From IMG/VR virus record IMGVR_UViG_3300037297_000066, positions 186,001 through 250,000 of that record: a DNA stretch of 64,000 bases; one strand, given 5' to 3'. How positions within the stretch are numbered: position 1 is the first letter of the stretch; every line of letters begins with the position of its first letter. Under the pieces are notes generated by a model. The model ran no database searches. It was not told where the DNA came from and saw only the letters and a list, made by a program, of their open reading frames with translations. This document shows, one piece after another, positions 18,513 to 60,356 of the stretch. The translations under genes were made by a program, and so were the position numbers.

Positions 18513-18537
18513 AGGGTACACCGGTTTGGTGTATGGT
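18513..18537. promoter_or_regulatory. Back-to-back class-B promoter pair
   Basis: AGGGTACACC-ggttt-GGTGTATGGT between divergent ATGs. Confidence 0.7.
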
Positions 18538-18544
18538 GGAGGGT

Positions 18545-18817
18545 ATGTCGAAAAACTCAACGCAGCTCGACCAACTGCGAGCCGAGACGGGTGCCGCTTT
18601 GGAACGTTACGGAGTGGCTTGTATGTCTTTGGCCAAGGCGATGGTGGAATACGAAATGGAACATAGCTCGGTTCCTCCTCTCCACTACTCGAAAGACGAT
18701 CCCAGGATGACTCGTATCATCGCCGCTCACAGGGAGATCGATAGAACGGAGCGTCTTGCAAGAGAGGCCAAGGTCCGCCTCCAGGAGGCTGAGACTTCTT
18801 CAGAGGTGGTGGAGTAA
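18545..18817 (+). CDS. Hypothetical helical protein
   Basis: Class-B start. Confidence 0.75.
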   Translation: MSKNSTQLDQLRAETGAALERYGVACMSLAKAMVEYEMEHSSVPPLHYSKDDPRMTRIIAAHREIDRTERLAREAKVRLQEAETSSEVVE

Positions 18818-18844
18818 AAAGATCCCCAACTTGGGGATCTTTTT
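18816..18844. terminator. Bidirectional intrinsic terminator
   Basis: AAAAAGATCCCCAA-C-TTGGGGATCTTTTT perfect inverted repeat. Confidence 0.8.
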
Positions 18845-18861
18845 GGTGTACTCTCCTGGGG

Positions 18862-19115
18862 ATGGGAAGAAGAACGCTGCCCTGGCCTTTGGGGATGCCC
18901 CGGACTCGGGAGAACGAGCATTTGTACCAATCGCATGTGGCGTTGGTATTGGGTTGGCCGGTTCGGTCTTTCTGGCACTGGCTCAGGAGTTTTGGGGGAC
19001 GTTCATGAAGAGGGGAGTCAAGACGCAGCTTCTGGTGCTTGAGATTGCGGTACTCTTGGAGGGGGTGGCACTCATGTGGCATTTGGTCCACACGCATGGG
19101 GATTGGTTTTGGTGA
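18862..19115 (+). pseudogene. Two-TM membrane protein, possibly frameshifted
   Basis: Promoter-defined ATG 18862 is out of frame with the TM-coding frame ending 19115. Confidence 0.35.
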
Positions 19116-19214
19116 GCTTTGCCTCAAAAGGGGATTTTCTGGTTTGACAAGGCAAGCTTTTTCGGAAGAAATGAGGGGGAAACAACTCCAGCTCTGCGGT
19201 TTTAAGGCAGAGAC
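19116..19214 (-). repeat. ~99-bp dispersed repeat D, copy 1
   Basis: Near-identical to 40108-40206 and to the reverse complement of 43514-43611. Confidence 0.9.
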
Positions 19215-19215
19215 C

Positions 19216-19752
19216 TCAGTCAACCAGTAGGGGGTGGCAGTACATTGGGAAGCGGGTGAAGTCTATGGGGGGCCTCACCTGTTTCTCCCCTGAGGGTGGT
19301 TTCCAGTGGAGCTGCTCATCACGTTCATCGGGGAGGTAGGCCCACCCTGGGGGGATTTCTCGGGAGACGTAGACCCTGAGCTTGTTGTAGTTACCGATGT
19401 GACCATCTTGGAGTTCTTCTCGACGTAATTCGGGGGTGAACTCGGGGTCATGCCGGAGGGTAACCAGGTCGATAGCGTTGAGGTAGCAGATACCTTCTCT
19501 GTAGGAGAGGGTGTCTTGGAGTTCCTGGAGGGTAGCTCGGGTTAGATTTCCGGCTGCTGTCTCCATGGCTTGCCACATATCGAGTTCAGGCTCGGTGGCT
19601 TCTCGGGTCTCACTTTTCCAGCCTGCGTGTTCGGTGAGCCACCCGATGCGTACATGGGGGTTGGGGCTCATCTCGATGTGGAAGGCCAGGTGGCAGCGTC
19701 CGGCGATACGTTTGGCTCGGACGGTATGGGAATCCCAGGGCTCGTAGGGCAT
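19216..19752 (-). CDS. Hypothetical protein with capsid-like C-terminal segment
   Basis: YLNAIDLVTLR..REELQDGHIGNY..VYVSREIPPG; resemblance by eye only. Confidence 0.7.
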   Translation of the reverse strand: MPYEPWDSHTVRAKRIAGRCHLAFHIEMSPNPHVRIGWLTEHAGWKSETREATEPELDMWQAMETAAGNLTRATLQELQDTLSYREGICYLNAIDLVTLRHDPEFTPELRREELQDGHIGNYNKLRVYVSREIPPGWAYLPDERDEQLHWKPPSGEKQVRPPIDFTRFPMYCHPLLVD

Positions 19753-19826
19753 GGGCCCAGTCTACCATTTCCGGCCCCTGAGGGAGCTCTTGAGTCCCGG
19801 GGTTCGGAGATTTTCTGGGGGGTCCG

Positions 19827-19855
19827 GGTTAAGATCTGGGCTTCCCAGGTGTAGT
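19827..19855 (+). promoter_or_regulatory. Class-A promoter 16
   Basis: Motif A, ATG after 6 nt. Confidence 0.8.
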
Positions 19856-19861
19856 AGGGGC

Positions 19862-20080
19862 ATGGCTACAAAGTCCGAAACAACCTGGAGTACGGTTGTT
19901 GAAGCCAAGAAGGGTCTTCGCCAACATTTGGGGCGTCTCTCATGGCTCAAGGTGGTCACGGCTAGCTATGACGCTCAAGGCTACCACCTTCTGGTCAAGG
20001 TACGACGAATCGATGCTGAGGTACGGGCGGCCGTGGGGGAGACTTTCCAAGGGGTTCGGGTAAAGACCGAACTAGGGTAA
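19862..20080 (+). CDS. Small alpha/beta protein (F.G.PV family)
   Basis: Similar to 30557 and 31298. Confidence 0.75.
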   Translation: MATKSETTWSTVVEAKKGLRQHLGRLSWLKVVTASYDAQGYHLLVKVRRIDAEVRAAVGETFQGVRVKTELG

Positions 20081-20088
20081 GGCAAGGC

Positions 20089-20370
20089 ATGACCACGAAA
20101 GTTGTTCAAGAAGAGAGCTGGGAAAACGGTGATCTTAAGGTAGGCTTCAAGATCATCTGGGAGTCTGGGGAAGAAGGTTCTTCTGAGGGGGGCTACGTGG
20201 TAGAGGTTTTTGAGCTCCTGATCGGGCTACCTATTCGGGTGACCCGGTTGTCCCGGGCTTCTGACCTAGTAGTGGCGCTTTTTGCGTGTGAAGGGGTCAA
20301 GGCTGGGTTTTACGCTGCTGGGTTCAAGCCTTTGGTTGGTGTGGCTGGAGGAGAGCTGACCAGGTCATAA
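20089..20370 (+). CDS. Hypothetical protein
   Basis: Operonic ORF. Confidence 0.65.
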   Translation: MTTKVVQEESWENGDLKVGFKIIWESGEEGSSEGGYVVEVFELLIGLPIRVTRLSRASDLVVALFACEGVKAGFYAAGFKPLVGVAGGELTRS

Positions 20371-20391
20371 TCCCAGGCACAGGTAAGACGG

Positions 20392-20799
20392 TCACGGGAG
20401 CTCGGCGACTGCCTGAAGGAGCTCGGGTGAGGGGCGGATACTCTGGGGTTCAGGGTAGCTACAGAGGATTAGCTCGGTATCTGGGGTCAGGCTTTTGAGG
20501 AAGCGCCGGCACTCCTTGTAGACGGGGGAACCTTCCAGGGCTTTCAGGGCAGTTTCCAGCTGGTCTGGGTGGTCATTGAGGTTTTGGATGAGCCAGCATT
20601 GGAGCTCTTGGGGGGAGATTTCCAGATCTTGTATAGCCTGGAGCATTCGGTTGATGGGGGGTTCTAGTTTCCCCATGAGTTCCAGCAAGAAGGCGGTGAT
20701 TTCTTCACCGTCGAACTCTTCACACAGTTGTTCGGCGGCAGCTTCGGTCGAGGTGGTTTGGTCTTTGACCAGCTGTTCGATTCGTTGTTTCAGGTCCAT
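20392..20799 (-). CDS. Hypothetical helical protein
   Basis: 135 aa; GTGTAGAAT upstream. Confidence 0.7.
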   Translation of the reverse strand: MDLKQRIEQLVKDQTTSTEAAAEQLCEEFDGEEITAFLLELMGKLEPPINRMLQAIQDLEISPQELQCWLIQNLNDHPDQLETALKALEGSPVYKECRRFLKSLTPDTELILCSYPEPQSIRPSPELLQAVAELP

Positions 20800-20846
20800 G
20801 GGGTTTCTCGACGGGGATTCTACACGATTTGGTGTATGGTGGGGGT

Positions 20847-21161
20847 ATGTCTGATCCCCCGGTGACGAACGAAGAGGTTGAGTCCTTCTTGAAGGTGTCT
20901 TTGGAGCGTTCTAGAACTCCGAGGGAGGCCCTGGTGGTTTGGGAGGTCTGCCGTTTGGTTGACCACGGTCGAGCTCACCTGACTCCGCCGGGGGTTCCCC
21001 CCAGTTCCCCTAGAGATGCTTTTCCGCCGCTCCCAAAGATTCCGCTCACGTTCTTTTCCCTGGGTGGGGGCCTGACGCAGCGAATCAAGGTTTCCGAGTT
21101 GCTGTGGGTGACGGCAGCGGTGGGGGCTTTGATGGTACTTTGTTGGTTTCTAATCCACTGA
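20847..21161 (+). CDS. C-terminally anchored membrane protein
   Basis: Class-B start; C-terminal TM. Confidence 0.7.
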   Translation: MSDPPVTNEEVESFLKVSLERSRTPREALVVWEVCRLVDHGRAHLTPPGVPPSSPRDAFPPLPKIPLTFFSLGGGLTQRIKVSELLWVTAAVGALMVLCWFLIH

Positions 21162-21170
21162 GAGGTAGTC

Positions 21171-21515
21171 ATGACGGTTTTGAACGGGGACGGATCTCCT
21201 GATTGGGAGGTCATCGAGCCTTCCGACATGTTGTTTGCGGTGACTCTGGATGGTCGTGACCCGGAAGGGAACGAGATCGAGGATGGCCCCACGGTGATCA
21301 TGTGTCCCCGGGAGTACTGGGAGGAAAACCTAGAGTGTTGGGACGACGACATCGCCTACGACTGGGTAGAAGAGAACGTCCCGGAGGAGCTGGAGCAGGG
21401 GATGGAGTCCACGTTCTACTTCGACAACAGGGACGATTGGCCGAGCATCCGGGATCGTTTGTTGAAGGCGGGGTTCAAGGAAGAGCCTCGGCTTTGGGAG
21501 GCCCCACCTGGGTGA
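21171..21515 (+). CDS. Acidic hypothetical protein
   Basis: GAGGT SD; D/E-rich. Confidence 0.75.
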   Translation: MTVLNGDGSPDWEVIEPSDMLFAVTLDGRDPEGNEIEDGPTVIMCPREYWEENLECWDDDIAYDWVEENVPEELEQGMESTFYFDNRDDWPSIRDRLLKAGFKEEPRLWEAPPG

Positions 21516-21529
21516 ATGTGGGGAGTCCG

Positions 21530-21558
21530 GGTTAAGATCCGGGTCCCCCAGGTGTAGT
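21530..21558 (+). promoter_or_regulatory. Class-A promoter 17
   Basis: Motif A, ATG after 6 nt. Confidence 0.8.
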
Positions 21559-21564
21559 AGGGGC

Positions 21565-21960: not shown

Positions 21961-21968
21961 GTACCACC

Positions 21969-25349: not shown

Positions 25350-25397
25350 GGGGGCACTATACACCGGAGCGGGTCACTTGTGGTGTACAGTTGACTT

Positions 25398-27037: not shown

Positions 27038-27117
27038 ACGCCTCACCATACACCGGGGGGTTGGGTTGACGGCTTGGATTCTGAGTTTTTGGTGTATGGT
27101 GGAAGAAGCGAGGAACG

Positions 27118-28114: not shown

Positions 28115-28417
28115 GTGAGCAGGGGCTTCTTTTCAGACCTAATTCGGGGTCGTCTCGTGCTAAACGAAGCCCCTGCCAAACCCTTCATGCTGAAGCTACT
28201 GGAGAAGACGGTTGAAGCCCTCACAGGGGAGCCTGTAGAGGTCCTCAGGGCTCGGAGCCTGGAGGAGGGTCGTAGGCTGGCGGAGCTACGGAACGGGGCT
28301 CCTATGCGATTCTCGGGGGATCCAGAGGGTGTCATCCTTACCCACGAGAGGGTTGAGGCTGATTTGGACCGAGCTCTGGACCAAGATCCGCGTTTTGTGG
28401 ATCTTGGTGTACGGTAG
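28115..28417 (+). CDS. Hypothetical protein
   Basis: GTG after GGTGTACAGT. Confidence 0.65.
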   Translation: MSRGFFSDLIRGRLVLNEAPAKPFMLKLLEKTVEALTGEPVEVLRARSLEEGRRLAELRNGAPMRFSGDPEGVILTHERVEADLDRALDQDPRFVDLGVR

Positions 28418-28421
28418 GGGA

Positions 28422-28539
28422 GGCAGGGCCCTAGGGCTTTGGCAATCGGCTCCCGGGCTCCAACCCCGGGGGCCTTCTTCCGGGGGTCCTGCCACTAAAC
28501 TCCCCCGGTGTGTTGAGGACCTATCAGGGGGAGATTTTT
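28422..28539 (+). ncRNA. Candidate sRNA: promoter, stem and terminator
   Basis: GGTGTACGGT places +1 on the first base of stem GGCAGGGCCCT/GGGGTCCTGCC; second hairpin then TTTTT. Confidence 0.6.
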
Positions 28540-29237: not shown

Positions 29238-29597
29238 ATGGGCAAAACAAGGATAGACTATCACGGTGGGGCGTCGAAAGAGGTATCCACCAAGGTTTGG
29301 TACCTAGAGGATATCCCCGACACTACCTTTTACCGTCAGCTGGAAGAGAGGGTTCGTCCGTTGGTGTACGTCCTACGTCAGCACGGTATCAACACTGAGA
29401 GCTCCTGTCACCACAGGGGGTACATTCAAGTTGATGGGAGTGCGTTCTCAAACAACGTCCATTTTTCTAGGGAGCTGTACTTCGCAATGTACGAGGTTAA
29501 CTGCCTACCCTACAACGTTCGGTGTGAACGGTACGTGGATGAGACGGGCCACTTCCACGAGATTTGCCGTATCCAGAGCGAGTTGTTGAAGATTTGA
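29238..29597 (+). CDS. Hypothetical protein (RPLV..L..G..T.SSC motif)
   Basis: Recurrent phage motif. Confidence 0.7.
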   Translation: MGKTRIDYHGGASKEVSTKVWYLEDIPDTTFYRQLEERVRPLVYVLRQHGINTESSCHHRGYIQVDGSAFSNNVHFSRELYFAMYEVNCLPYNVRCERYVDETGHFHEICRIQSELLKI

Positions 29598-29632
29598 GGC
29601 TCGTGTTCCAACCTCTCGGTGTATGGTGGGGC

Positions 29633-30802: not shown

Positions 30803-30845
30803 GTTTGGACTATACACCAGGACCTCTTGCAGGTAGGGTAGACAA

Positions 30846-33847: not shown

Positions 33848-33907
33848 GCCAGAGACTATACACCAGAAAGAAGCTCTTCAATCCCGAACTTTGGTGTATC
33901 ATGAACT

Positions 33908-34447: not shown

Positions 34448-34501
34448 TCCCGAGTTCACAGGGAGATTCCGATCCCACTCGAACTGGTGTATGGTGGGGG
34501 C

Positions 34502-36659: not shown

Positions 36660-36698
36660 GCCGCTACCATACACCAACTCTCAGGACAGGAGCGTGGA

Positions 36699-39449: not shown

Positions 39450-39527
39450 GCCTAACCATACACCGGTCGTCCGGGTCCCCGTTCCAGGTTTTGAGTTTCC
39501 AGGATCTTGCTATGATTTCGCAGGGGC

Positions 39528-40958: not shown

Positions 40959-41018
40959 GTCGGTACTATACACCTACTCTGAAGGCCGAGGGGGTCTTTT
41001 GGTGTACGGTGGATTGCA

Positions 41019-45291: not shown

Positions 45292-45424
45292 CCCCGAGCT
45301 TGGGGGTGGTTGATGCCAGAGTACATACAAGACAACAGTCCTGAGGCCACGGGGGAGTGGGTGCAGTGGAACGACCCGGGGACCACGGGAGAATTTGTCT
45401 ACTGGGTGCCGCCTTCAAGGGTGT

Positions 45425-45871
45425 ATGCTCTTGGGCATGATCACTTTCGAGGAAGCACAGAAGTGGCATCGGCGGTTCACGTGGGACGACCGCATCACGC
45501 CGGGGGCCGCTAGAATCAGCGTGGATGTCAGTGGCTCGGGGCTGTACCAAGCGTTGGGCTCGGCCGTTGCTCTGCAGAAGAACCAGGGGAAGATCCCTCA
45601 GGTCATCCTGATCCCTTGGGCCTGGGCTGCCCTTCTTTCGGAGTTCTCGCACGAGCATTTCTCGAAAGGTGGTCGGCTGAAGGACCTTACGCTCTGCTAC
45701 AGCGACTACGATCCATTGCTGTGGGGCTACTTTGCGCTCTTCCAGGGAATCGATGTCTTTGCCAGCCATCTCGTCAGTTCCAGACAGTTTCCCGCTTGTG
45801 TGTGCGCCAGTCGGGACCCCCACCAAATGAACGAGGGGGAGAACCTCGTCATCCTGGAAGAAGCTACGTAG
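45425..45871 (+). CDS. Hypothetical protein (possible capsid-like segment)
   Basis: LLWGYFALFQGIDVFASHLV; start uncertain. Confidence 0.55.
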   Translation: MLLGMITFEEAQKWHRRFTWDDRITPGAARISVDVSGSGLYQALGSAVALQKNQGKIPQVILIPWAWAALLSEFSHEHFSKGGRLKDLTLCYSDYDPLLWGYFALFQGIDVFASHLVSSRQFPACVCASRDPHQMNEGENLVILEEAT

Positions 45872-46199: not shown

Positions 46200-46222
46200 A
46201 CCGTACACCGCCGGTGTACAAT
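46200..46222. promoter_or_regulatory. Back-to-back class-B promoters 3 bp apart
   Basis: ACCGTACACC-gcc-GGTGTACAAT between ATGs at 46193 and 46228. Confidence 0.75.
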
Positions 46223-46227: not shown

Positions 46228-46413
46228 ATGATCAGATTGGAAGTCCGAGACGTAACAGGAACCATCCTGAAACCCTTTACTTCGGTGGACGCGGTCCCTC
46301 CAACAGGAGCTCAGATGCGGTTCAACCGTGTTGCCTACAAGATCGTTCACCAAGAATGGGAATACGAAGGGGTATACCCCATCGTCAGGCTGTTCGTCCG
46401 AAAAGCAAAGTAG
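46228..46413 (+). CDS. Small beta protein
   Basis: Class-B start. Confidence 0.75.
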   Translation: MIRLEVRDVTGTILKPFTSVDAVPPTGAQMRFNRVAYKIVHQEWEYEGVYPIVRLFVRKAK

Positions 46414-46436
46414 CTCACCTGTAAGCGAGATAGAGC

Positions 46437-48020
46437 ATGCCTGAGCTCTCTAAAGCTTTGGAGGAGAATCTTCATGCCGCTGTGAAGACAGCCAGAGAGA
46501 AGCACATAGCTATCTGGAAAGAGGCGCTGGAGGAGCACCAGAACCATCCGAGCTTTAGGACCAAACAAGACCCAATAAAAAGGCTACTTGGGTTCACCTG
46601 TGAGTGTGGGGGAAGTGTTCAGGAGTGGATGGTTGATGTCTGCGACCTGAAGAGAGTGGAAAAAGAAGCTCGTCAAAGATTGATGAGAATCCTGCATAAC
46701 AAGCGGAACTGTGGGAACAAGGCCAGAAAACGGAAAGCTCGTAGGGCTCAGGTCAAAGCCTGGTCTATACTCTGTCGGCATCTCACTCGGGAACAGAAGC
46801 GAGAACTACGCCACCTCCAACGGTTCCAAGTCCAAGGACAGGATGGGAAAACTTACGAAATACGTTCCAACAACATCCACAACATCCGACGCTTGGACGA
46901 GGAGGGGGAGCCTGACTACGCTTTCTGTCTCGTGACCAACACTCAGGTCTCTGGAACGGTCCCCATCTTCGACACCATCTTGACCCAGAAGGTGTTGTTG
47001 GAAGGGGCCCTCCGAGTCTTCTTGGAAACAGCGCACGCTGAGAGTCTGAAAACAGGGGAGATTTTCGAGAACGGACTCCACCTGATCGATGCTTCGAAGA
47101 CTCCCAAAGTTATTTGGAAGCGAGGCTCTTTAGGAGAAGTGTTGAGGACAGCCCGTGAGACTCGTAACCTACAAGTAGTCACGAAACCTCGGATCTGGAG
47201 GCTATGCGATAGGGGGACTCCCGAGATTTTGACGATTGACGTGGTCTACGCTGATGCCACTTACGACACTCTTGAAGGGGTGGGGTGGGTACTAGATCCG
47301 GAACTAGGAGTGACTGTCCAGTTCGGAGATCTGCTGAAGGTCCCCCCTATCACCAAACCAGACACTCGAAAGTGCCTCATCAAACTATTCACAGGTGTCC
47401 CTGCTTCTGTTTACCCCACCTTTGACCAAGTACTGAATCACTTTCGAACGGCTGATTTGCCCTGGATGTTCACCCTCTCCCATCCGATGACAGAGTACCC
47501 TGACAAGATACGAGGGGTGTTCCGAATCGAAGACAAGCTTCTTCCCGTGGGGAAAATCTACTGCCTGTCAGAAGCCTCGATGGTGGGCATGCACGTGGTT
47601 TGGCAAGAGAGTGATGACCGAGGCTTTGCCCTCTTCAACCTGAATGGTATCTGCATCTACGAGACTGGGATATGTCGAAGAAAACTGCTAAGGCCAGTAC
47701 CAAGAAGCCGGCTAAGAAGCGTCAGTCGAAGCCGAGGCCACAACAAGCAAAAGCACCGGCCAAGGCCAAGAAGAAGCCCGCCAAATCGAAGGCTCAGCCG
47801 AAGCGTGTTGCCAAGAAAGCGGCCAAGAGGCAGACTCGAAAGTCCCAGCCCCAGCCGAGGAAACCCCAGTCCCTCCCTGAAGGCTTCTTGCTCAAGGTCG
47901 AATGGGACCCGGAGAGTAGTGAAGACAAGCAAGTTGCTAACCGCATCTACCAAAGGCAGTGTAGAGCCCGACATCGCCTGTACACCATTGCCAAGGATGG
48001 GAAAATTGGAGAACGTCTAA
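46437..48020 (+). CDS. Multidomain hypothetical protein (3' end overlaps next gene)
   Basis: LTREQ..FQVQGQDGKTYEI..D.ILTQKVLLE domain. Confidence 0.75.
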   Translation: MPELSKALEENLHAAVKTAREKHIAIWKEALEEHQNHPSFRTKQDPIKRLLGFTCECGGSVQEWMVDVCDLKRVEKEARQRLMRILHNKRNCGNKARKRKARRAQVKAWSILCRHLTREQKRELRHLQRFQVQGQDGKTYEIRSNNIHNIRRLDEEGEPDYAFCLVTNTQVSGTVPIFDTILTQKVLLEGALRVFLETAHAESLKTGEIFENGLHLIDASKTPKVIWKRGSLGEVLRTARETRNLQVVTKPRIWRLCDRGTPEILTIDVVYADATYDTLEGVGWVLDPELGVTVQFGDLLKVPPITKPDTRKCLIKLFTGVPASVYPTFDQVLNHFRTADLPWMFTLSHPMTEYPDKIRGVFRIEDKLLPVGKIYCLSEASMVGMHVVWQESDDRGFALFNLNGICIYETGICRRKLLRPVPRSRLRSVSRSRGHNKQKHRPRPRRSPPNRRLSRSVLPRKRPRGRLESPSPSRGNPSPSLKASCSRSNGTRRVVKTSKLLTASTKGSVEPDIACTPLPRMGKLENV

Positions 48021-48109
48021 CTACCTTCAACGAGAAGGCAGGGGCGTTCATGGTACTCAGGGGATTCACGGTTTGGGATCAAATTCAGGAGAATACCAAT
48101 GAAGCATGA
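47672..48109 (+). CDS. Histone H1-like Lys/Ala-rich protein
   Basis: KKTAKA/KKPAKK repeats; ends TVWDQI. Confidence 0.75.
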   Translation: MSKKTAKASTKKPAKKRQSKPRPQQAKAPAKAKKKPAKSKAQPKRVAKKAAKRQTRKSQPQPRKPQSLPEGFLLKVEWDPESSEDKQVANRIYQRQCRARHRLYTIAKDGKIGERLTTFNEKAGAFMVLRGFTVWDQIQENTNEA

Positions 48110-48326
48110 GATGAACATCTTAGGACAAGAAGGCCACACCTGCTGCACTTGGGACCCGAGCAACCCCGAAAGTGTGTCCGCTGCCAATGAGACCTTCGAA
48201 GGGTTGAGATCCCAAGGCTATCGAGCGGCTGCCATGAACGCTGATGGATCTACGGGGTCTTTCGTGGAGAGTTTCGATCCTAGTTCTGAGAACATCCTGT
48301 TCGTCCTTCCCGTTGTGGGAGGGTAG
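48099..48326 (+). CDS. Small protein ending in di-Gly
   Basis: TWDP..A..TF..L..GY..FDP..PVVGG. Confidence 0.8.
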   Translation: MKHEMNILGQEGHTCCTWDPSNPESVSAANETFEGLRSQGYRAAAMNADGSTGSFVESFDPSSENILFVLPVVGG

Positions 48327-48360
48327 ACCGTGTTCGTGGGGCTCACCCTTTGGTGACGTC

Positions 48361-48648
48361 GTGCTTAGAGTCGTCGGGAAGACTGAAGAAGGTCAGCTCA
48401 TAGTAGCGGGTGTCTACCGCTACTACGAAACGACGGGGCTACCCCTCGACGTGATGTTTGATTGCCTTCGTCAGAAGGGGGCCATCCCTGACTGGTTGAC
48501 CTTTTACGTGGAGGCTGTCCGAGCCGGGATGAAGCACGAACGCATCCTGGCCAAGCTGGATCCAGCCCTCGTTGACGCTTACGGTTTCGCCTTCCGAGAC
48601 GTTGTGATAGAACGTTTGGAACTGGTGACTCGTCATTGGACGGAGTAG
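48361..48648 (+). CDS. Alanyl-tRNA-synthetase-fragment-like protein
   Basis: GVYRYYETTGLPLD..DW..F resembles AlaRS F.LYDTYGFP.D. Confidence 0.5.
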   Translation: MLRVVGKTEEGQLIVAGVYRYYETTGLPLDVMFDCLRQKGAIPDWLTFYVEAVRAGMKHERILAKLDPALVDAYGFAFRDVVIERLELVTRHWTE

Positions 48649-48652
48649 CGCT

Positions 48653-49219
48653 ATGGAACGACGAACGATCATGAAGGTTTTGGGCTTGCTTCCTTTCGCA
48701 GGGGGCCTTTCAGCAAAGCCTGCTAGAGCTAGTTTCGAGCCCGATGAATCCGAAGGGATTTCCTACGTCTGGCTGGCTCGCACAGGACCTGAGGATTTCG
48801 AGAGACAGCTACAGTCAAAGGGGTCTGCCATTTGGTGGAACTGTCCTCTCCAACGCAGGTTCCAAGAGGGTATAGAAGAGTCGGAAGCCAAGTTGCGTAG
48901 GCGGGGCCTCCAACCCATCTTGGAAGGGCCTTTTCACTTCATGTTTCGCCAAGGGGAGGAGCGAGAACCGTGGGGCGGTCCTGCTTGGAACGAGCCGCTT
49001 CATTTGGAAAATGCCGGAATCATCTTCAGGGATCGCCGGTGGGGAACCATCCTTCGGGCTTTTGACTTGAGGCGAAGGGCCTTGTGCTCGGAGCTCATGA
49101 CCCCGAAAACAGGAATGTCCTTCCGTGCCTACGACGAACTTGCAGAGAAGAGGTTTGGATGGCCCACGGAGGTTTGTGCCTGCTACAAGGTTCGTAAGCT
49201 GCCTGGCTTTGCAGGGTGA
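48653..49219 (+). CDS. Protein with Tat-like signal
   Basis: MERRTIMK..PARA; paralogue of 49232. Confidence 0.7.
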   Translation: MERRTIMKVLGLLPFAGGLSAKPARASFEPDESEGISYVWLARTGPEDFERQLQSKGSAIWWNCPLQRRFQEGIEESEAKLRRRGLQPILEGPFHFMFRQGEEREPWGGPAWNEPLHLENAGIIFRDRRWGTILRAFDLRRRALCSELMTPKTGMSFRAYDELAEKRFGWPTEVCACYKVRKLPGFAG

Positions 49220-49231
49220 GGGCAGGCTTTC

Positions 49232-49714
49232 ATGCCAATCAGAGCCTACGCCATTCCAGGGAGGTGTTGCGAACAAGCCATCGTGGTGTGGTCTACAGTC
49301 CTAGGCCCTTCTGACTTCAAACAATCTAACTGGGGAGGCCAACCTTTTTTCACAGGCTGCATCAAAGGCAAGTTCGAGCAGGGCATGCAAGAGACACTGG
49401 GTTGGATGAAGCTCAAAGGTCTAGAGGTTGTTCCTGATAGCTACATCAACTTTGTGTTTCAGCGGCAGGAAGAACCTTGGGGAGATAGATCGCTCAAAGA
49501 CACTCTAGTAGCAGAAGCGAAAGGCAGCTTGGGAGAGAGACGTTTCGACATTGTGGACCGAGCCTGGCAAATACTGGATACGGAGGCTAGCGTACGTCTA
49601 CGACCTCCAGAGCCAGGCAAAACACCCTCAAGTTCCCGAGGGGCTGCTATGGAGGCTTTCGGGTTGCCTGATGGTTTGGAAGTATCGATCTTGGCTAGGA
49701 CCATCGAACCATGA
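49232..49714 (+). CDS. Paralogue of 48653 without signal
   Basis: GP.DF..GL....F.F..EPWG. Confidence 0.7.
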   Translation: MPIRAYAIPGRCCEQAIVVWSTVLGPSDFKQSNWGGQPFFTGCIKGKFEQGMQETLGWMKLKGLEVVPDSYINFVFQRQEEPWGDRSLKDTLVAEAKGSLGERRFDIVDRAWQILDTEASVRLRPPEPGKTPSSSRGAAMEAFGLPDGLEVSILARTIEP

Positions 49715-50613
49715 CTGACTTCATCTTCGATTGTGAGACCGGGGACCCGGACGACATTCTCACCGTTATCCTGCTCGCTACGCACCCTAGGAGCCGTCTC
49801 AGGGCCGTTACGGTAACCCCGGGGACCCGAGGCCAGGTCGGGGTCGTAAAGCACGTCTTGGGGCTCCTAGGGCTCCCCAAGGTGCCAGTGGGGTCAGCCA
49901 AGCCGGACCACCCCAAGAACTGCGTCTCGGATTTCCACTACCACTGGCTTGGAAGGGATATTCCGGACGCTGAGCCGGATGGTTACGGCTACGAAATCAT
50001 CCACGACGTTCTGGTGCCTCCGCCGGGGCTCATCGTGGAGGATTACGGCCCGAGAGGAGAAATCGAGCCCGTCACCATTGTGACAGGGGCTCCTCTCACG
50101 AACATCTGGGAGGCTATCAAGCACGGGGTTCGTATTCCCAGCATCTACATCCAGGGAGGATTCGCCGGAGACAACCTGGTGGCCCCTGAGGACCGGCTAG
50201 AGAAGTTTGCTGGGAAGACGACGGTAGCCACCTGGAACCTGGGAGGCAACTCTAAGGCAGCGGAGGGGGTTCTTGCTTCTGGCTTGGTAGGAGAACGACA
50301 CCTAATCGGGAAGAACATCTGTCACGGAGTGACCTACACGGCCGAACTTCACGAGAAGGTCAAGCAGGTCGATCACCTGGAGGTGTTGGCCTCAGCAATG
50401 ACCTCTTATCGGGCTCGTCACAGTCACAACAAGGCGCTCCACGATCCTCTGGCAGCATGCACAGCCCTTGACCCAAGCATCTGTACGTTCGTCGAAGCCC
50501 AGGTCTACCGGGAGAAGGGGCAGTGGGGATCCCGAGCTATGGCTGGGACTGACACTTGGGTAGCGGTCAAGCATGACCAAGAGCGGTTCGAGCAAGTGTT
50601 CCTGGGAGGCTGA
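49711..50613 (+). CDS. Inosine-uridine-type nucleoside hydrolase
   Basis: DCETGDPDD, TGAPLTN, TWN, LHDP. Confidence 0.88.
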   Translation: MTDFIFDCETGDPDDILTVILLATHPRSRLRAVTVTPGTRGQVGVVKHVLGLLGLPKVPVGSAKPDHPKNCVSDFHYHWLGRDIPDAEPDGYGYEIIHDVLVPPPGLIVEDYGPRGEIEPVTIVTGAPLTNIWEAIKHGVRIPSIYIQGGFAGDNLVAPEDRLEKFAGKTTVATWNLGGNSKAAEGVLASGLVGERHLIGKNICHGVTYTAELHEKVKQVDHLEVLASAMTSYRARHSHNKALHDPLAACTALDPSICTFVEAQVYREKGQWGSRAMAGTDTWVAVKHDQERFEQVFLGG

Positions 50614-50614
50614 G

Positions 50615-51001
50615 ATGAAGACGAGCGTAATCCAAAGCAAGCTGAAGGAGATCGTAGGGAACGAACCCAACAGATACCAAAAGGCTGTCGTTGCACTGAG
50701 AAAGGGAGCGTTGCAACTTCAAGAGGCGATGGGAAAGCCTTTCAAAGTGTGGTTCAAACCGAGCGAATTTTGCAGCGAGCACCACATACGGTTTCATCTG
50801 AAGGTGGTGTCTGAGGGGAAGCTCGACGAGACTCTTTTCTCAGCCCTCGTGTCTTCTGAAGGATTCCCCATCGTCTTCAGAGACCACAACTACGAACGCC
50901 AGGCTTCTTGTGCTGGAAAAGTCGGAGCTTGTATGGCGGAGATGCTGAACAACCCGAGTCTGAATCTACGTCTTCGGGGAATCCTGATTCTCGGGAGGTG
51001 A
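50615..51001 (+). CDS. Hypothetical protein
   Basis: GGAGG SD. Confidence 0.7.
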   Translation: MKTSVIQSKLKEIVGNEPNRYQKAVVALRKGALQLQEAMGKPFKVWFKPSEFCSEHHIRFHLKVVSEGKLDETLFSALVSSEGFPIVFRDHNYERQASCAGKVGACMAEMLNNPSLNLRLRGILILGR

Positions 51002-51573: not shown

Positions 51574-51609
51574 GCCTAACCATACACTCTCTGGTGTATG
51601 GTGCTAGCT

Positions 51610-52783: not shown

Positions 52784-52816
52784 CTGAACTCACCTACGTT
52801 AGTGTACAGTCAGAGC

Positions 52817-54598: not shown

Positions 54599-54606
54599 CC
54601 TCCTCA

Positions 54607-54629
54607 CCATACACCAACTGGTGTATGGT
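54607..54629. promoter_or_regulatory. Back-to-back class-B promoters
   Basis: ACCATACACC-aact-GGTGTATGGT. Confidence 0.75.
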
Positions 54630-55452: not shown

Positions 55453-55552
55453 GTATCCGTCGAACTCTCCTCTCGAACAAGCCTCTACCTAGCATGAGCT
55501 GCCGTGGGCTACTTGTTGCATTTTTTCTTCCTGAATGGTGTAGGATTTCTTC

Positions 55553-56395: not shown

Positions 56396-56737
56396 TTACC
56401 CCTCAGGCCACGACCCACAATCGTAAAGCTCCTTTTCAGAAGCGTGTGGCGGGATCTTCCTCTTGGCGGAGAGTCCCCCATGCTCTTGGAAGAGCTTGCC
56501 GATAGGACAAGGCTTTCCTCGTTTGGGAAGGAAATCTGGGTCGTAGTTGGAGTTTCCGTAGATGTGGCAGGGGCTGCCCTTGAACCAGGACTCCCCGTGG
56601 ACGGCACAGCAGGCTTGAGAGCCCTCAAAGGATAGGTGGGGGCACTGACGTCCTTCGGGTTTCAGAACAGCCTTGTCTTCGATCCTAATGACGACGGCCA
56701 TGGTGATACAGCAGTTTCCGCAACGCTGGCAGATCAT
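56396..56737 (-). CDS. YkgJ-like CxxCxxCC protein
   Basis: CQRCGNCC..CPHL..CAVH. Confidence 0.8.
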   Translation of the reverse strand: MICQRCGNCCITMAVVIRIEDKAVLKPEGRQCPHLSFEGSQACCAVHGESWFKGSPCHIYGNSNYDPDFLPKRGKPCPIGKLFQEHGGLSAKRKIPPHASEKELYDCGSWPEG

Positions 56738-56800
56738 AGGCAAGTCTCCTGAGGCAGATACTCTACCCTACCGTACACCACTTGGTGTATGGTCCCTCCT

Positions 56801-57617: not shown

Positions 57618-57627
57618 GGTCCTAAGC

Positions 57628-58386
57628 GTGTACTGGTTGAGCCTTGACTGGGACTTCTTCTGTCGGGAAGAGTCGGAGTGGGACTGGGGCCACGCCGAAA
57701 CGGACTTGTTCCAGACAGCTGTGTGGGAGATCCGAGCCGCACAACTAGAAAACCCTCGCAAGACTACAGCTCTCCTTCCGTACCCAAAGCCTTTTCTCAA
57801 GCGACTGGCTGCTCATCTCGACTTCGAGGGATGTCGGTTCCTCCAGGCAGCTGACAGCCACAAATACGCTTTTCGTACCTTCGAAGAAGCCTACGAGGGG
57901 ACCATCCTTCAGATAGATGCCCACCACGACATTGCCTACAGCGCCCGGGACACGGTGGACCCGAACAAAGTGGACTGCTCTAACTGGTTAATCCAGAGAC
58001 TGGCCAGTAGACCAAACCTCAAGCTCGTAGTGGTGTACCCTCCTTGGAAAGGGCTTAGGGAGGCCGCCGACATCCATCGGTTGGTACCCCAGGAAATCCT
58101 GTCTAGGGTGGAGTTTCGGGTATGGCCTAATTTGCCGCCACCAGGAACTGTCTCTGGAGCGTTTTGCTGTCGTTCAGGAGGCTGGGCTCCCCCCTGGCAT
58201 GATAGGGCCTTCACGAGGTTCCTAGCCGGGCTAGAAGAGGTGTGTGGGTGTAGCCGGCAGATGGTTCAGGAGCTCCCCGTCCGGAAGTTCTCCTGGAAGA
58301 GGGTCAAGGCCCTTGCTGGGGGAATAGCCTCCTTGAAAGACCCCACTTCCACGGCCCGGGACCGAATCTTAGAGGGTGTAGTGTAG
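57628..58386 (+). CDS. Arginase/UPF0489-like metallohydrolase
   Basis: SLDWDFF, DSH, IDAHHD, CSNW. Confidence 0.7.
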   Translation: MYWLSLDWDFFCREESEWDWGHAETDLFQTAVWEIRAAQLENPRKTTALLPYPKPFLKRLAAHLDFEGCRFLQAADSHKYAFRTFEEAYEGTILQIDAHHDIAYSARDTVDPNKVDCSNWLIQRLASRPNLKLVVVYPPWKGLREAADIHRLVPQEILSRVEFRVWPNLPPPGTVSGAFCCRSGGWAPPWHDRAFTRFLAGLEEVCGCSRQMVQELPVRKFSWKRVKALAGGIASLKDPTSTARDRILEGVV

Positions 58387-58410
58387 AGCGTTGCTCTGGT
58401 AGAGTGGGCC

Positions 58411-59340
58411 ATGGCCAACTATCCTTTCAAGTCTGCCAGAGACGCTCTCCTGAGGGCCTCGGAGAAAGCGAAGTCCAGCCACCCGGAAATAGACACTCCG
58501 TTGTCTCGGGAAGATATCGCTCTTTTGCTCCAGCACATGCGGCCCCCGTGCAAGCTCCATGGTCTGTGCTCTGGGGAACTCGAAGATGTGCCTCCAGCCA
58601 CACGGGCGTTCTACCTTCCGGAGACGGGACACACCTGGTACTTCTGTGATGAGTGCGACTTCGACGATGAGCATTTCGAAGATCACAGAGAGGAGTTGGA
58701 AGTCTGTTACGGAAAGTGGCCGCCTGCTTTCTTGGTCACTGACCTGCCGTGGGCAGATGCGATTCGCAGAGCTCAGAAGGCTCTGGATCCTGAGGGATGG
58801 TTCGAGAAGCAACGACAAGCCTATCTCAAGAACCAGCAGTACTTGGAGAGCATGAAAGACTGGCCGGAAACAACCGACCTTCAAGTTTCCGTTCGGCAAG
58901 CCTTTCTCTCTCTGGCCCATGCGTTGAAGCCCTGGCTACCCCAAGCCAGTTACTGCCCTGCCACTACACACGTTCTAGACGATTACGAAACATGGCGGGA
59001 CCTTGGACTGGCCCAAGAGGTGGTTGAGGTGGAGAGTCGAATCCTTTTCCTGACCTCGAAGGACAACAAGGTAGGGGTAACCCTAACGCCTATTCACATC
59101 CTGAGAAAAGGACGGTTCTCCGCTATCCTGACCTTCAACATGTTTCCTAGTGCAGGATCCAAGTCGGAGATGAATCTTTCTTGGAGGCAACAGATCGTAG
59201 TGCGCCGAACAGACTCTCAGGCCATAATTGCAGAACTCCAAGGTAGTCGCTGGAAGGGAACGCCCCTAGCCGAGCTTCTCAGAAAGGATCTGGCCCAATG
59301 TTTGTCAGAGACGGAACCAAGTACGGTGGCCCCGGACTGA
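58411..59340 (+). CDS. Hypothetical protein
   Basis: 309 aa; GGTAGAGT 5 nt before ATG. Confidence 0.8.
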   Translation: MANYPFKSARDALLRASEKAKSSHPEIDTPLSREDIALLLQHMRPPCKLHGLCSGELEDVPPATRAFYLPETGHTWYFCDECDFDDEHFEDHREELEVCYGKWPPAFLVTDLPWADAIRRAQKALDPEGWFEKQRQAYLKNQQYLESMKDWPETTDLQVSVRQAFLSLAHALKPWLPQASYCPATTHVLDDYETWRDLGLAQEVVEVESRILFLTSKDNKVGVTLTPIHILRKGRFSAILTFNMFPSAGSKSEMNLSWRQQIVVRRTDSQAIIAELQGSRWKGTPLAELLRKDLAQCLSETEPSTVAPD

Positions 59341-59544
59341 GCGAATGCTACCGCCCCTCGGAGGCTGACCCCGTCGTCGAGGTGGTGGTGGGTAAAGTCA
59401 GTTCCCGGCCTGACTACATGACAGTTTCTCAGTGTCGTCGTAGGCTCGACCAGGTCCTGGGGTTGCTGGAGTGGCACTCGAACGAGTTCGACGAGGATCA
59501 GCTCACATTCCTCAGGACCGAAGCTGACCATCTGAAGAAAGCGC

Positions 59545-59973
59545 TCAAACTCTGAGGGGCAAGTACCTTCGGAGTTCCTCGGGGGGATCCCACCAATCTT
59601 CTAGTTGAGGGGCTAGCTCTTCTTCGTACTTGGGATCGACATACCAGATTCCGAATCGAACCAGCCTTGGTTTGCCGGGGCCCAGGTAGAGAGGGCGTCT
59701 TATGGTCACCATGAGGACACCCGTTTTGCGTCGTAGTTTCTTGGCGACCTTTTTGATGTCTCCACGGACGTGAGTAACCGGTGCCTGTAACATGTGAGGG
59801 GCCACCCTCAAGAACCCGACAGGGCGCCAGCAAAGCTTCTTAGGCTCTTCAGGATAGAGCTGATGTCCACAAGTTTTGCAGCGTTTGACCAGGTTTGCCC
59901 ACATCATACTCTCCGGCGGACAGTCCGTTACTACATGGGCAGCATCAGAAACCTTGTCGTAGTAGACTCGCAT
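59545..59973 (-). CDS. Hypothetical protein
   Basis: ATG 6 nt after GTGTATAAT. Confidence 0.75.
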   Translation of the reverse strand: MRVYYDKVSDAAHVVTDCPPESMMWANLVKRCKTCGHQLYPEEPKKLCWRPVGFLRVAPHMLQAPVTHVRGDIKKVAKKLRRKTGVLMVTIRRPLYLGPGKPRLVRFGIWYVDPKYEEELAPQLEDWWDPPEELRRYLPLRV

Positions 59974-59980
59974 GGCCGGA

Positions 59981-60301
59981 TTATACACTAGTACGAGCGA
60001 CGAGGCCCTCTGCCACCAAGGCATCTAGCAGCAGGGACATGTGACCGCTTTCCTTGTTGTCCCATTCGCAGACGATCTCACAGCCTTGGAACACTCCGTT
60101 TGCTCGAAGACGTTTGACCCGGGGCCTCACAACCGTGTCTCGGTTCAAGCCCAGGAAACGAGCAATCCTGTCAGCGTTGGGGCCCACCTGAAGGGAGGCC
60201 AACAAGATTCTGACGCTGTCCTTCACGGGGAAGTTGTCTTCAGAGAAGAAGGGATCCTGAAGAATCCTCTCAATCTCCTGCAATGTCTGCTCTTTGCTCA
60301 C
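59981..60301 (-). CDS. HTH-like protein
   Basis: RIARFLGLNR..RLRANGV; class-B start. Confidence 0.7.
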   Translation of the reverse strand: MSKEQTLQEIERILQDPFFSEDNFPVKDSVRILLASLQVGPNADRIARFLGLNRDTVVRPRVKRLRANGVFQGCEIVCEWDNKESGHMSLLLDALVAEGLVARTSV

Positions 60302-60356
60302 GCCCTACCATACACCAGTTGGTGTACAGTAGGCACATGGCTCTTGGAGAAGGTTC

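What the first reader, a model, noticed from the sequence alone, without database searches (positions are those of the whole stretch)
18513..60330. Second leaderless promoter class (GGTGTANNNT) forming ultra-compact bidirectional promoters
Seen: more than 30 genes have (G)GTGTANNNT, mostly TATGGT, TACAGT, TACGGT or TATAGT and once TATAAT, 5-7 nt before ATG/GTG with no SD. About 11 divergent gene pairs use back-to-back copies; several are only 3-5 bp apart (18513, 46200, 51579, 54607, 56770, 60307), leaving no room for separate -35 elements outside the opposite gene. Classes A and B share GTGTA. Inference: an extended -10-only promoter and largely leaderless translation, suggesting two temporal regulons and possibly a way to escape shut-off of SD-led host translation.
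Basis: partly seen in the sequence, partly recalled or inferred. Interest (0 to 1): 0.7.

Follow-up and report, generated by a model that had tools for sequence, protein, structure and literature searches.

The report
Minimal leaderless promoters in a jumbo phage
A 437-kb uncultivated phage places an almost invariant 11-bp "-10-only" promoter-like element (YGGTGTAYRGT) 5-7 bases before the start codon of dozens of small genes, often as back-to-back pairs serving two divergent genes; this is a new sequence variant of a strategy already known from Thermus phages and from Deinococcus and actinobacterial genomes.

Summary
GTGTANNNT occurs 62 times in the window against 12.9±3.5 in shuffles. It occurs 200 times in the 437-kb phage genome, and in 77 of these an ATG or GTG opening an ORF of at least 40 codons lies exactly 5, 6 or 7 nt downstream (37 of them in the window). 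Changing any one of G-15, T-14, G-13, T-12, A-11 or T-7 abolishes that peak. There is no -35 signal and no usable SD. The spacer is G-rich and the base before the start codon is a pyrimidine in 81% of sites. Eleven back-to-back divergent pairs lie in the window, seven of them with only 5-7 nt between the 9-mer cores.

The best reading is a -35-independent, extended -10-like promoter read by a sigma-70-family holoenzyme that starts at the start codon and so gives leaderless first cistrons. Whether the host primary sigma or a phage sigma-like protein reads it is open. No transcript data, host or motif-sharing relative could be found.

The "escape from SD shut-off" idea is weakened, because virion and replication genes are SD-led. 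The principle is known from phiYS40, P23-45, Lalka phages and Deinococcus-Thermus. The motif itself and the fixed compact cassette are new.

The parts
18513..18537 (.). Compact back-to-back class B pair with 7 nt between the 9-mers. Minus copy GTGTACCCT leads to ATG 18506 (69 aa). Plus copy GTGTATGGT leads to ATG 18545 (90 aa).
20817..20840 (.). Compact pair with a 6-nt gap. Plus copy leads to ATG 20847 (104 aa, leaderless geometry). Minus copy GTGTAGAAT has a 17-nt leader to ATG 20799 (135 aa).
25356..25391 (.). Pair with an 18-nt gap. Minus copy leads to ATG 25349 (196 aa). Plus copy leads to ATG 25398 (70 aa).
27045..27100 (.). Pair with a 38-nt gap. Minus copy leads to ATG 27037 (75 aa). 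Plus copy has a 17-nt leader containing GAGGA, then ATG 27118 (99 aa).
33855..33902 (.). Pair with a 30-nt gap. Minus copy leads to ATG 33847 (62 aa). Plus copy (TATCAT) leads to ATG 33908 (179 aa).
40965..41010 (.). Pair with a 28-nt gap. Minus copy leads to ATG 40958 (239 aa). Plus copy has an 8-nt spacer to ATG 41019 (105 aa).
46200..46222 (.). Most compact pair, with a 5-nt gap. Minus copy TACGGT leads to ATG 46193 (109 aa). Plus copy TACAAT leads to ATG 46228 (61 aa), the first cistron of the plus-strand gene run 46228-51001.
51579..51602 (.). Compact pair with a 6-nt gap. Minus copy leads to ATG 51573 (74 aa). Plus copy leads to ATG 51610 (58 aa).
54606..54629 (.). Compact pair with a 6-nt gap. 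Minus copy leads to ATG 54598 (88 aa). Plus copy leads to ATG 54635 (171 aa). No change in the 1.3%-divergent strain of run X3.
56770..56793 (.). Compact pair with a 6-nt gap. Plus copy leads to ATG 56801 (96 aa). Minus copy has a 26-32 nt leader containing CAGGAGA, then a 113-115 aa ORF ending at 56396.
60307..60330 (.). Compact pair with a 6-nt gap. Minus copy leads to GTG 60301 (106 aa). Plus copy leads either to a 7-codon mini-ORF at 6 nt, or through a 26-nt leader (GGAGAAGG) to GTG 60357 (156 aa).
1607..9666 (-). Eight single class B copies, each 6-7 nt before the start of one gene in a co-directional minus-strand array. 9-mers at 1607, 4193, 5350, 6734, 7626, 8197, 9252 and 9658. Starts at 1599, 4186, 5343, 6727, 7619, 8190, 9245 and 9651. 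All five products tested (those starting at 1599, 4186, 5343, 6727 and 7619) have no Pfam family.
18283..18291 (-). Single class B copy leading to ATG 18277 (251 aa).
18846..18854 (+). Single class B copy directly after a perfect hairpin followed by a T-run (AAAAAGATCCCCAACTTGGGGATCTTTTT), leading to ATG 18862 (48 aa). This looks like a terminator followed by a promoter.
29619..29627 (+). Single class B copy leading to ATG 29633 (288 aa).
30809..30817 (-). Single class B copy leading to ATG 30802 (81 aa).
34487..34495 (+). Single class B copy leading to ATG 34502 (83 aa).
36666..36674 (-). Single class B copy leading to ATG 36659 (158 aa).
39455..39463 (-). Single class B copy leading to ATG 39449 (249 aa).
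45421..45429 (+). Single class B copy (TATGCT) leading to ATG 45437 (144 aa).
52802..52810 (+). Single class B copy leading to ATG 52817 (128 aa). The non-consensus A at -16 (position 52801) is G in the X3 strain, a change towards the consensus.
55538..55546 (+). Single class B copy (TAGGAT) leading to GTG 55553, an R2K ATP-grasp protein (248 aa). The X3 strain's contigs break at 55519-55527, at the upstream edge of the element.
59980..59988 (-). Single class B copy, the only TATAAT, leading to ATG 59973 (142 aa).
62297..62305 (+). Single class B copy leading to GTG 62311 (137 aa).
16899..16990 (+). Class B copy (16899-16907) with no ORF behind it. A structured RNA candidate of about 75 nt follows, and its closing helix begins at 16914, the 7th base after T-7. 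It is a paralogue of the element at 28407.
28407..28494 (+). Class B copy (28407-28415) with no ORF behind it. The paralogous structured RNA candidate has a closing helix beginning at 28422, the 7th base after T-7.

Best explanation
Class B is a compact promoter that needs no -35 element. Its consensus is Y-17 G-16 G-15 T-14 G-13 T-12 A-11 Y-10 R-9 G-8 T-7, followed by a purine- and G-rich discriminator (RRGG) and a pyrimidine at -1. A sigma-70-family RNA polymerase holoenzyme would read it as follows. Sigma region 2 captures A-11 and T-7. The GGTG block upstream takes the role of an extended -10 contact that replaces the -35. The G-rich discriminator acts like the GGGA basal element. Transcription then starts about 7 nt after T-7, on the A or G of the start codon, so the first cistron is a leaderless mRNA that ribosomes load at its 5'-terminal AUG. 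Downstream cistrons use ordinary SDs. In divergent pairs two such elements sit back to back with 1-3 bp between the 11-mers. The two start sites are then about 36-38 bp apart and the two polymerase footprints must overlap. Shown: the motif, its indispensable positions, its spacing and orientation relative to starts, the lack of -35 and SD, and the pair geometry. Inferred: that it is a promoter, where transcription starts, which sigma reads it (host primary sigma is my first choice), and leaderless translation.
For: - Enrichment: 62 against 12.9 copies in the window.
- Spacing: a sharp 5/6/7-nt peak of ORF-opening ATG/GTG (26/36/15 of 200). It is absent from composition-matched words and lost when any of G-15, T-14, G-13, T-12, A-11 or T-7 is changed.
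- T-12, A-11 and T-7 are the signature positions of sigma-70-family -10 elements (established knowledge). PMC12340547 shows TANNNT a few bp before ORFs acting as a -10-only promoter for leaderless genes in Deinococcus-Thermus.
- Information content is below 0.25 bit everywhere from -30 to -40. TTGACA-N16-18-TATAAT-like sites are depleted in 16-36 kb, 1 against 5.7±2.5.
- The base at -1 is a pyrimidine in 62 of 77 sites against 54% in SD-led controls, and +1 is A or G. This is the usual start-site preference.
- The spacer is G-rich at -4/-3 (47 and 45 of 77). This resembles the GGGA element at -6/-3, which changes Thermus aquaticus sigma-A affinity about 100-fold (PMC3526302).
- No functional SD.
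- The element also occurs with 17-32 nt SD-bearing leaders. It also precedes two paralogous structured RNAs whose closing helix begins exactly at the 7th base after T-7. It therefore acts independently of a start codon, as a promoter would and a translation signal would not.
- Two copies directly follow hairpin plus T-run terminator-like sequences, at window 18846 and genome 304001.
- There are 16 back-to-back pairs against 2 face-to-face.
- No phage RNA polymerase was found by three Pfam models or among 28 large proteins.
- Precedents: phiYS40 middle and late mRNAs are leaderless (PMC3594737). P23-45 middle and late promoters are of the extended -10 class (PMC7403470). Lalka late promoters carry a special TAGGGT -10, start 6 bp downstream, and include a divergent pair in one short intergenic region (bioRxiv 10.64898/2026.04.20.719267).
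Against: - No 5' ends are available: no RNA run was listed.
- There is no comparative support. Relatives at about 45-56% protein identity lack the motif, and no other IMG/VR contig inspected shows it.
- Near-invariance over 9-11 bp is stricter than usual for promoters read by a host primary sigma. TG lies at -14/-13, not the canonical -15/-14.
- The 10-mer plus ATG is not enriched in the 5 genomes with the best ADP-ribosylglycohydrolase matches or in 301 sampled Actinomycetota.
- The phage encodes at least one sigma-like protein that could read it instead.
- Divergent, highly diverged phage polymerases could have escaped the searches.
Confidence: 0.72

Rival explanations
1. The same promoter function, but class B is read by a phage-encoded sigma-like factor or a phage-remodelled polymerase rather than the unmodified host primary sigma. 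This would resemble T4 late promoters, which are a single -10-region box read by gp55. The strict 11-bp consensus would then be that factor's own specificity.
For: - Every one of six positions is indispensable and canonical TGnTANNNT is not used.
- The motif is absent from relatives and from sampled candidate host lineages.
- A 261-aa protein at genome 272901-273686 scores 0.97 with sigma-70/ECF clusters in the Atlas feature search. It also has a PHROG sigma-factor hit and a C-terminal HTH.
- The neighbouring 386-aa ORF has a weak Sigma70_r2 hit.
- A 223-aa protein carries two region-4-like HTH domains.
Against: - The sigma-like assignments are weak: Pfam hits are below cut-off, the Atlas model has pLDDT 0.59, and only one homologue exists.
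- ECF-type sigmas normally need a -35. That fits class A (GGTTAAGATC-N9-CANGTGTA) better than class B.
- The T-12/A-11/T-7 pattern plus a G-rich discriminator is what primary sigmas (regions 2 and 1.2) read.
Confidence: 0.25
2. The element acts in RNA rather than DNA. It would be an unconventional ribosome-loading or translation-enhancer sequence, or an endonuclease processing site that trims polycistronic RNA to leaderless mRNAs.
For: - The distance to the start codon is fixed.
- In the co-directional array at 1-10 kb every gene carries its own copy, with no obvious terminators between genes.
- The G-rich spacer contains GAGG in some sites.
Against: - In compact pairs the start codons are only about 37 bp apart. 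An RNA carrying the element would have to start inside the opposite gene, where no promoter-like signal is seen.
- The conserved positions are exactly T-12, A-11 and T-7.
- The element also occurs 17-32 nt upstream of SD-led starts and in front of non-coding structured RNAs.
- SD-like words lie 0-3 nt from the start, too close to act as an SD.
Confidence: 0.06
3. The palindromic pairs (ACCRTACACC-N4-GGTGTAYGGT) are operators for a dimeric phage regulator, and single copies are half-sites.
For: There are 11 compact inverted repeats with a nearly constant 5-9 nt centre. Several HTH proteins are encoded.
Against: - About 45 of the 77 start-linked sites are single copies.
- Each copy is oriented and spaced relative to its own start codon.
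- Pair gaps of 18-74 nt also occur.
- The constant gap follows from packing two 11-bp elements with G-16 and Y-17 intact.
Confidence: 0.05

Closest known systems
Thermus thermophilus phage phiYS40 middle and late genes (Sevostyanova et al. 2007, as summarised in PMC3594737)
   Same: A large phage in which most transcripts of a temporal class lack a leader.
   Different: In phiYS40 the middle and late genes are leaderless. Here the virion genes (terminase, portal, tail) and the replication genes are SD-led, and the leaderless set consists of small genes of unknown function in the central block. The host here is unknown and the sample is a wetland or sediment, not a hot spring. I could not read the original paper.
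Thermus phage P23-45 middle and late promoters with gp39 (PMC7403470)
   Same: These are -35-independent promoters of the extended -10 class. They stay active when a phage protein displaces sigma region 4 and shuts off -10/-35 promoters. This gives a ready model for how class B could outlast class A and host promoters.
   Different: No gp39 or AsiA homologue was sought or found here. TG is at -14/-13, not TGn. The consensus is far stricter.
Thermus Lalka phage late promoters (bioRxiv 10.64898/2026.04.20.719267)
   Same: A class-specific -10 hexamer (TAGGGT) without a usable -35, with start sites 6 bp downstream of TANNNT. Promoters are dense, with no terminators between collinear genes, and one short intergenic region holds two opposed late promoters.
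   Different: The hexamer and flank differ (a conserved C at -25 there, GGTG at -16 to -13 here). That phage is 73 kb and temperate. Only one divergent pair is described there, against 16 here with fixed geometry.
The '-10 region adjacent to ORF' mode of Deinococcus-Thermus, and the leaderless genes of Actinobacteria (PMC12340547, PMC3160421)
   Same: TANNNT a few bp before the ORF is sufficient as a promoter, has a spacing requirement relative to the start codon, and has no -35 in most cases.
   Different: Those are degenerate host-wide signals. Here an 11-bp near-invariant word is confined to one phage. It is not enriched in 301 sampled Actinomycetota, and Deinococcus-Thermus genomes were not scanned for the word.
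GGGA downstream basal promoter element and sigma region 1.2 (Feklistov et al. 2006; PMC3526302)
   Same: A G-rich discriminator immediately after the -10 strengthens promoters that lack a -35. From memory, unverified: the sigma-A aptamer and crystal oligo TGTACAATGGG has TG abutting TA, as class B does (my search for it found nothing relevant).
   Different: Here the G-run is strongest at -4/-3, and A at -3 is not conserved.
Bidirectional promoters from -10 symmetry (Warman et al. 2021; from memory, not looked up)
   Same: Divergent transcription from one very short region.
   Different: That type shares one symmetric -10 region, with start sites about 18 bp apart. Here two separate -10 elements lie back to back, with start sites about 36-38 bp apart.

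Membership tests
Sigma-70-family -10 promoter element | Hexamer TANNNT with A-11 and T-7 indispensable | tested here: met
   Replacing A-11, T-7 or T-12 removes the start-codon-linked peak.
Sigma-70-family -10 promoter element | Transcription starts 6-9 nt downstream of the hexamer, preferring a purine at +1 after a pyrimidine at -1 | tested here: inconclusive
   No RNA data. Indirect support: the start codon's A or G is the 6th-8th base after T-7, and -1 is a pyrimidine in 81% of sites. Two structured RNA candidates begin at the 7th base.
Extended -10 (TGn) promoter class | TG at -15/-14, one base before the hexamer | tested here: not met
   TG is at -14/-13 (GGTG-TA). TGnTANNNT gives no peak: 323 copies, 2-8 per offset.
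Extended -10 (TGn) promoter class | Works without a -35 element | tested here: inconclusive
   The sequence shows no -35 conservation, and compact pairs leave no room for one. Activity itself was not measured.
Leaderless mRNA | 5' end at or within a few nt of the start codon | not testable with these tools
   No RNA run was listed.
Leaderless mRNA | No SD at functional spacing; AUG preferred | tested here: met
   One of 77 sites has an SD 4-mer at 4 nt or more from the start. ATG 59, GTG 18.
Symmetry-type bidirectional promoter (shared -10, start sites about 18 bp apart) | One -10 region read on both strands | tested here: not met
   Two distinct 9-mers separated by 5-7 nt, giving an inferred start-site distance of 36-38 bp.
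Promoter of a phage-encoded RNA polymerase (T7-like, phiKZ/AR9-like, P23-45 gp64-like) | A phage RNA polymerase gene is present | tested here: inconclusive
   No hit to PF00562, PF00623 or PF00940. For PF00940 the control genomes gave no hit either, so that result is uninformative. No polymerase was found among 28 large proteins. Very divergent enzymes could be missed.
T4-late-type promoter (single -10 box read by a gp55-like sigma) | A gp55/gp33-like factor is encoded | not tested
   Only generic sigma models were run. Sigma-like candidates exist at genome 271310-273686.

The most novel reading that the evidence does not exclude
Class B is the private promoter of a phage-encoded, region-4-independent sigma-like factor (or of a host polymerase remodelled by phage proteins). 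Such a factor would need only an 11-bp word. The 26-bp palindromic cassette would then be a true bidirectional unit in which two polymerases compete for mutually exclusive occupancy, partitioning expression between divergent leaderless genes. Class A (GGTTAAGATC-N9-CANGTGTA) would be read through the same GTGTA contact plus a -35-like anchor. Together this would be a two-step sigma cascade in an uncultivated 437-kb phage.
Probability: 0.2. Interest if true: 0.7.

Novelty: new variant of a known kind. Interest (0 to 1): 0.45.

Why it matters
If confirmed, this gives an exceptionally small and well-defined transcription-translation start module: 11 bp of promoter, about 6 bp of discriminator and an AUG. 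It also comes in a bidirectional form of about 37 bp. That is useful as a model for -35-independent promoter recognition with TG abutting the -10, and for competition between overlapping divergent promoters. It would also allow the regulons of a huge uncultivated phage to be annotated from sequence alone, including corrected start codons for about 77 genes and candidate small RNAs. For phage biology it points to a layered programme: class A, class B, then SD-led replication and virion operons. This differs from phiYS40, where the late genes are the leaderless ones.

Tried and rejected
- Close phage relatives by DNA: none in the GenBank phage collection.
- Relatives by protein: huge IMG/VR phages at about 45% identity do not carry the motif. 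A contig whose sigma-like homologue is 56% identical does not either.
- Two window proteins have no IMG/VR relatives.
- The class A pattern was not found elsewhere in IMG/VR.
- RNA evidence: none was listed. Only DNA runs from wetland, marsh and marine-sediment metagenomes hold the sequence.
- Host, via the CRISPR repeat: the phage's own repeat is absent from genome contigs.
- Host, via a window protein: the ADP-ribosylglycohydrolase matches mixed MAGs at 33-47%, many of them Actinomycetota (Geothermincolia, Solincola). This is too weak to name a host.
- Host, via the motif: five of those genomes, and 301 sampled Actinomycetota, show no enrichment of the motif plus ATG. The sample of 301 includes two unpublished genomes, G011 and G098, and the claim does not depend on them.
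- Strain-level conservation: a 1.3%-divergent strain in run X3 has 0 changes in 72 nt of 9-mer cores and 1 in 88 nt of 11-mers (towards the consensus). About 1 change was expected, so the test has no power.
- Rfam found nothing in the window, so the 101-nt 'tRNA-Gly' that ARAGORN reports at 29528-29628 is probably spurious.
- The phiYS40 and P23-45 primary papers are not held. The remembered oligo TGTACAATGGG could not be verified.
- Structure prediction of the sigma-like proteins was not run, because only one homologue exists and the Atlas model is poor.
- A sigma-54, archaeal TATA/BRE or Bacteroidetes-type promoter was considered and rejected from the motif's position and letters alone (established knowledge). 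The genome also carries a tmRNA and uses SDs, which points to a bacterial host.

Full report
**Context**

The window is bases 186001-250000 of a single 437,331-bp virus record with direct terminal repeats (55% G+C). It is therefore a complete genome of an uncultivated jumbo phage. Near-identical DNA occurs only in wetland, marsh and marine-sediment metagenome runs.

The genome encodes:
- DNA polymerase, helicases, ribonucleotide reductase, NAD-ligase and a chaperonin;
- terminase, portal and tail proteins;
- 52 credible tRNAs (ARAGORN lists 53, one of them a dubious tRNA-Gly), a tmRNA and two CRISPR arrays.

No RNA polymerase was recognised.

**Step 1: is the observation real?**

GTGTANNNT occurs 62 times in the window against 12.9±3.5 in shuffles. 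It occurs 200 times genome-wide, concentrated between 140 and 260 kb.

The decisive test is position. An ATG or GTG that opens an ORF of at least 40 codons lies 5, 6 or 7 nt after the final T in 26, 36 and 15 copies. Composition-matched words and all other offsets give 0-5.

The motif was not imposed by my search pattern. Changing any single one of G-15, T-14, G-13, T-12, A-11 or T-7 abolishes the peak, and the canonical extended -10 word TGnTANNNT shows no peak at all.

Positions I did not fix are also biased (renumbered so that the T of TANNNT is -12):
- Y at -17 (69 of 77)
- G at -16 (70 of 77)
- Y at -10 (70)
- R at -9 (63)
- G at -8 (63)
- G at -4 and -3 (47 and 45)

Aligned on the start codon, the base at -1 is a pyrimidine in 62 of 77 sites, against 54% in SD-led control genes. 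No column between -30 and -40 exceeds 0.25 bit.

Only 15 of the 77 sites contain any GGAG/GAGG/AGGA within 20 nt. In 14 of those 15 it ends 0-3 nt from the start codon.

**Divergent pairs**

Only 2 face-to-face and 4 tandem arrangements occur within the same distance.

Seven window pairs have 5-7 nt between the 9-mers. Because G-16 and Y-17 are also conserved, the two 11-bp elements are 1-3 bp apart, which is close to the tightest possible packing. If transcription starts at the 7th base after T-7, the start sites are gap + 31 bp apart, that is 36-38 bp.

The -35 position of each element then falls on the partner's discriminator and first codons.

One correction: in five window pairs one partner is not leaderless. 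Four have 17-32 nt leaders with SD-like words and one has an 8-nt spacer.

**Step 2: what is it?**

Several features point to a DNA-level promoter rather than an RNA-level signal:
- The indispensable positions are the three that define sigma-70-family -10 elements.
- The Y(-1)/R(+1) rule holds at the start codon.
- The same element stands 17-32 nt upstream of SD-led starts.
- It also precedes two paralogous structured RNA candidates of about 75 nt, at window 16899 and 28407. They fold with z = -3.2 and -3.05, and their closing helix begins exactly at the 7th base after T-7.
- Two copies directly follow hairpin plus T-run sequences.
- Canonical -35/-10 promoters are depleted in the region.

Downstream cistrons, and the replication and virion modules, use ordinary SDs 5-10 nt from the start. 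The genome therefore mixes leaderless promoter-proximal cistrons with SD-led genes. All ten class B products I tested have no Pfam family. That is typical of early or middle host-takeover genes, though this is an inference.

**Class A**

The other class is GGTTAAGATC-N9-CA(C/G/A)GTGTA(G/A)T... followed by ATG, in about 40 copies. About 20 are in the window, mostly at 10.7-16.1 kb.

It shares GTGTA with class B but differs in three ways. It has a -35-like upstream block. It lacks T-7. Its ATG sits about 8 nt after GTGTA, against 9-11 nt in class B. The geometry therefore differs by about 2 nt, and the two classes need not be read in the same way.

The phage encodes a 261-aa protein that resembles ECF-type sigma factors (Atlas feature score 0.97, a PHROG sigma-factor hit and a C-terminal HTH). 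A weaker sigma-region-2-like neighbour lies beside it. Two regulons are thus plausible but not shown.

**Step 3: mechanism**

Most likely (0.72), a sigma-70-family holoenzyme binds the 11-bp element without any -35 contact. The GGTG block and the G-rich discriminator would supply the missing affinity. A comparable effect is measured for the GGGA element in Thermus aquaticus (PMC3526302). Transcription would then begin on the start codon and yield leaderless mRNA.

Whether the host primary sigma or a phage factor does this is open. The strictness of the word, the shifted TG, and its absence from relatives and from sampled Actinomycetota keep the phage-factor version alive at about 0.25.

RNA-level and operator explanations are unlikely, for the reasons given under the rival explanations.

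**Step 4: comparison with what is known**

The principle is established in several systems:
- -10-only promoters adjacent to ORFs in Deinococcus-Thermus (PMC12340547);
- leaderless middle and late mRNAs of phiYS40, with the IF2/IF3 idea (PMC3594737);
- class-specific TAGGGT late promoters of Lalka phages, including one opposed pair (bioRxiv 10.64898/2026.04.20.719267).

Class B fails the strict definition of a TGn extended -10. It also fails that of a symmetry-type bidirectional promoter. It works like the former and is not the latter.

The new elements are the word itself, its near-invariance, the abutting TG, the recurrent 36-38 bp bidirectional cassette, and the setting in a huge environmental phage. 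The strategy is not new.

The suggestion that leaderless translation lets the phage escape a shut-off of SD-led translation is weakened, because the phage's own virion genes depend on SDs.

**Limits**

There are no transcript data, no host and no motif-sharing relatives. My gene calls are crude (a codon-usage score). The strain comparison had no statistical power.

Noticed in passing
window 10700-16100 (about 15 copies); also 19828, 21531, 27826, 28568 and 42584; genome-wide about 40: Class A element, GGTTAAGATC-N9-CA(C/G/A)GTGTA(G/A)T..., followed by ATG about 8 nt after GTGTA. It is a roughly 40-bp two-block promoter-like motif, also apparently leaderless. It was not found in any other IMG/VR contig.
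   Followed up: partly
window 16899-16990 and 28407-28494 (+): Two paralogous structured RNA candidates of about 75 nt, with a 5' GGCAGGGCCC... / ...GGGGGUCCUGCC closing helix of 11-13 bp and fold z-scores near -3. Each starts at the predicted +1 of a class B element. They have no Rfam family, and only two copies exist in the genome.
   Followed up: partly
genome 99600-101400 and 109400-111100 (outside the window; minus strand): Two CRISPR arrays, about 38 repeats in all, with a 36-nt repeat containing a GAGGGAGG-loop-CCTCCCTC hairpin. They flank genes that include a helicase-like 690-aa protein and an unassigned 618-aa protein. The repeat is absent from 185,579 species genomes.
   Followed up: partly
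genome 257557-257714 (outside the window): Two adjacent tRNAs with a CUA anticodon (amber suppressors), among the 53 tRNA calls. TAG is frequent just upstream of late-gene starts. I did not test whether TAG is recoded late in infection. Long ORFs read normally under table 11.
   Followed up: no
genome 302878-303261 (outside the window): A phage-encoded tmRNA with tag peptide ANDNAIADQAIAA.
   Followed up: no
genome 271310-273686 and 334433-335104 (outside the window): Sigma-like proteins. One is a 261-aa ECF-like protein, one a 386-aa ORF with a weak region-2 hit preceded by a degenerate class A upstream block, and one a 223-aa protein with two region-4-like HTH domains. A DNA methylase gene follows at 273731.
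   Followed up: partly
window 29528-29628 (+): ARAGORN calls a 101-nt tRNA-Gly that overlaps the class B element at 29619. Rfam's tRNA model does not match it, so it is probably a false positive.
   Followed up: yes
window 55519-55527: In the 1.3%-divergent strain of run X3 the contigs break here, with unrelated sequence on either side, exactly at the upstream edge of the class B element of the ATP-grasp gene. This may be a mosaic or recombination boundary at a promoter.
   Followed up: no
window 4753-5343 and 5930-6727 (-): Two genes in the minus-strand array share an identical promoter, spacer and first codons (GTGTATGGT ggggga GTGAGGATACTC). They are probably tandem paralogues duplicated together with their promoter.
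   Followed up: no
genome 386596-391014 (outside the window): A UvrD-like helicase gene interrupted by an intein.
   Followed up: no
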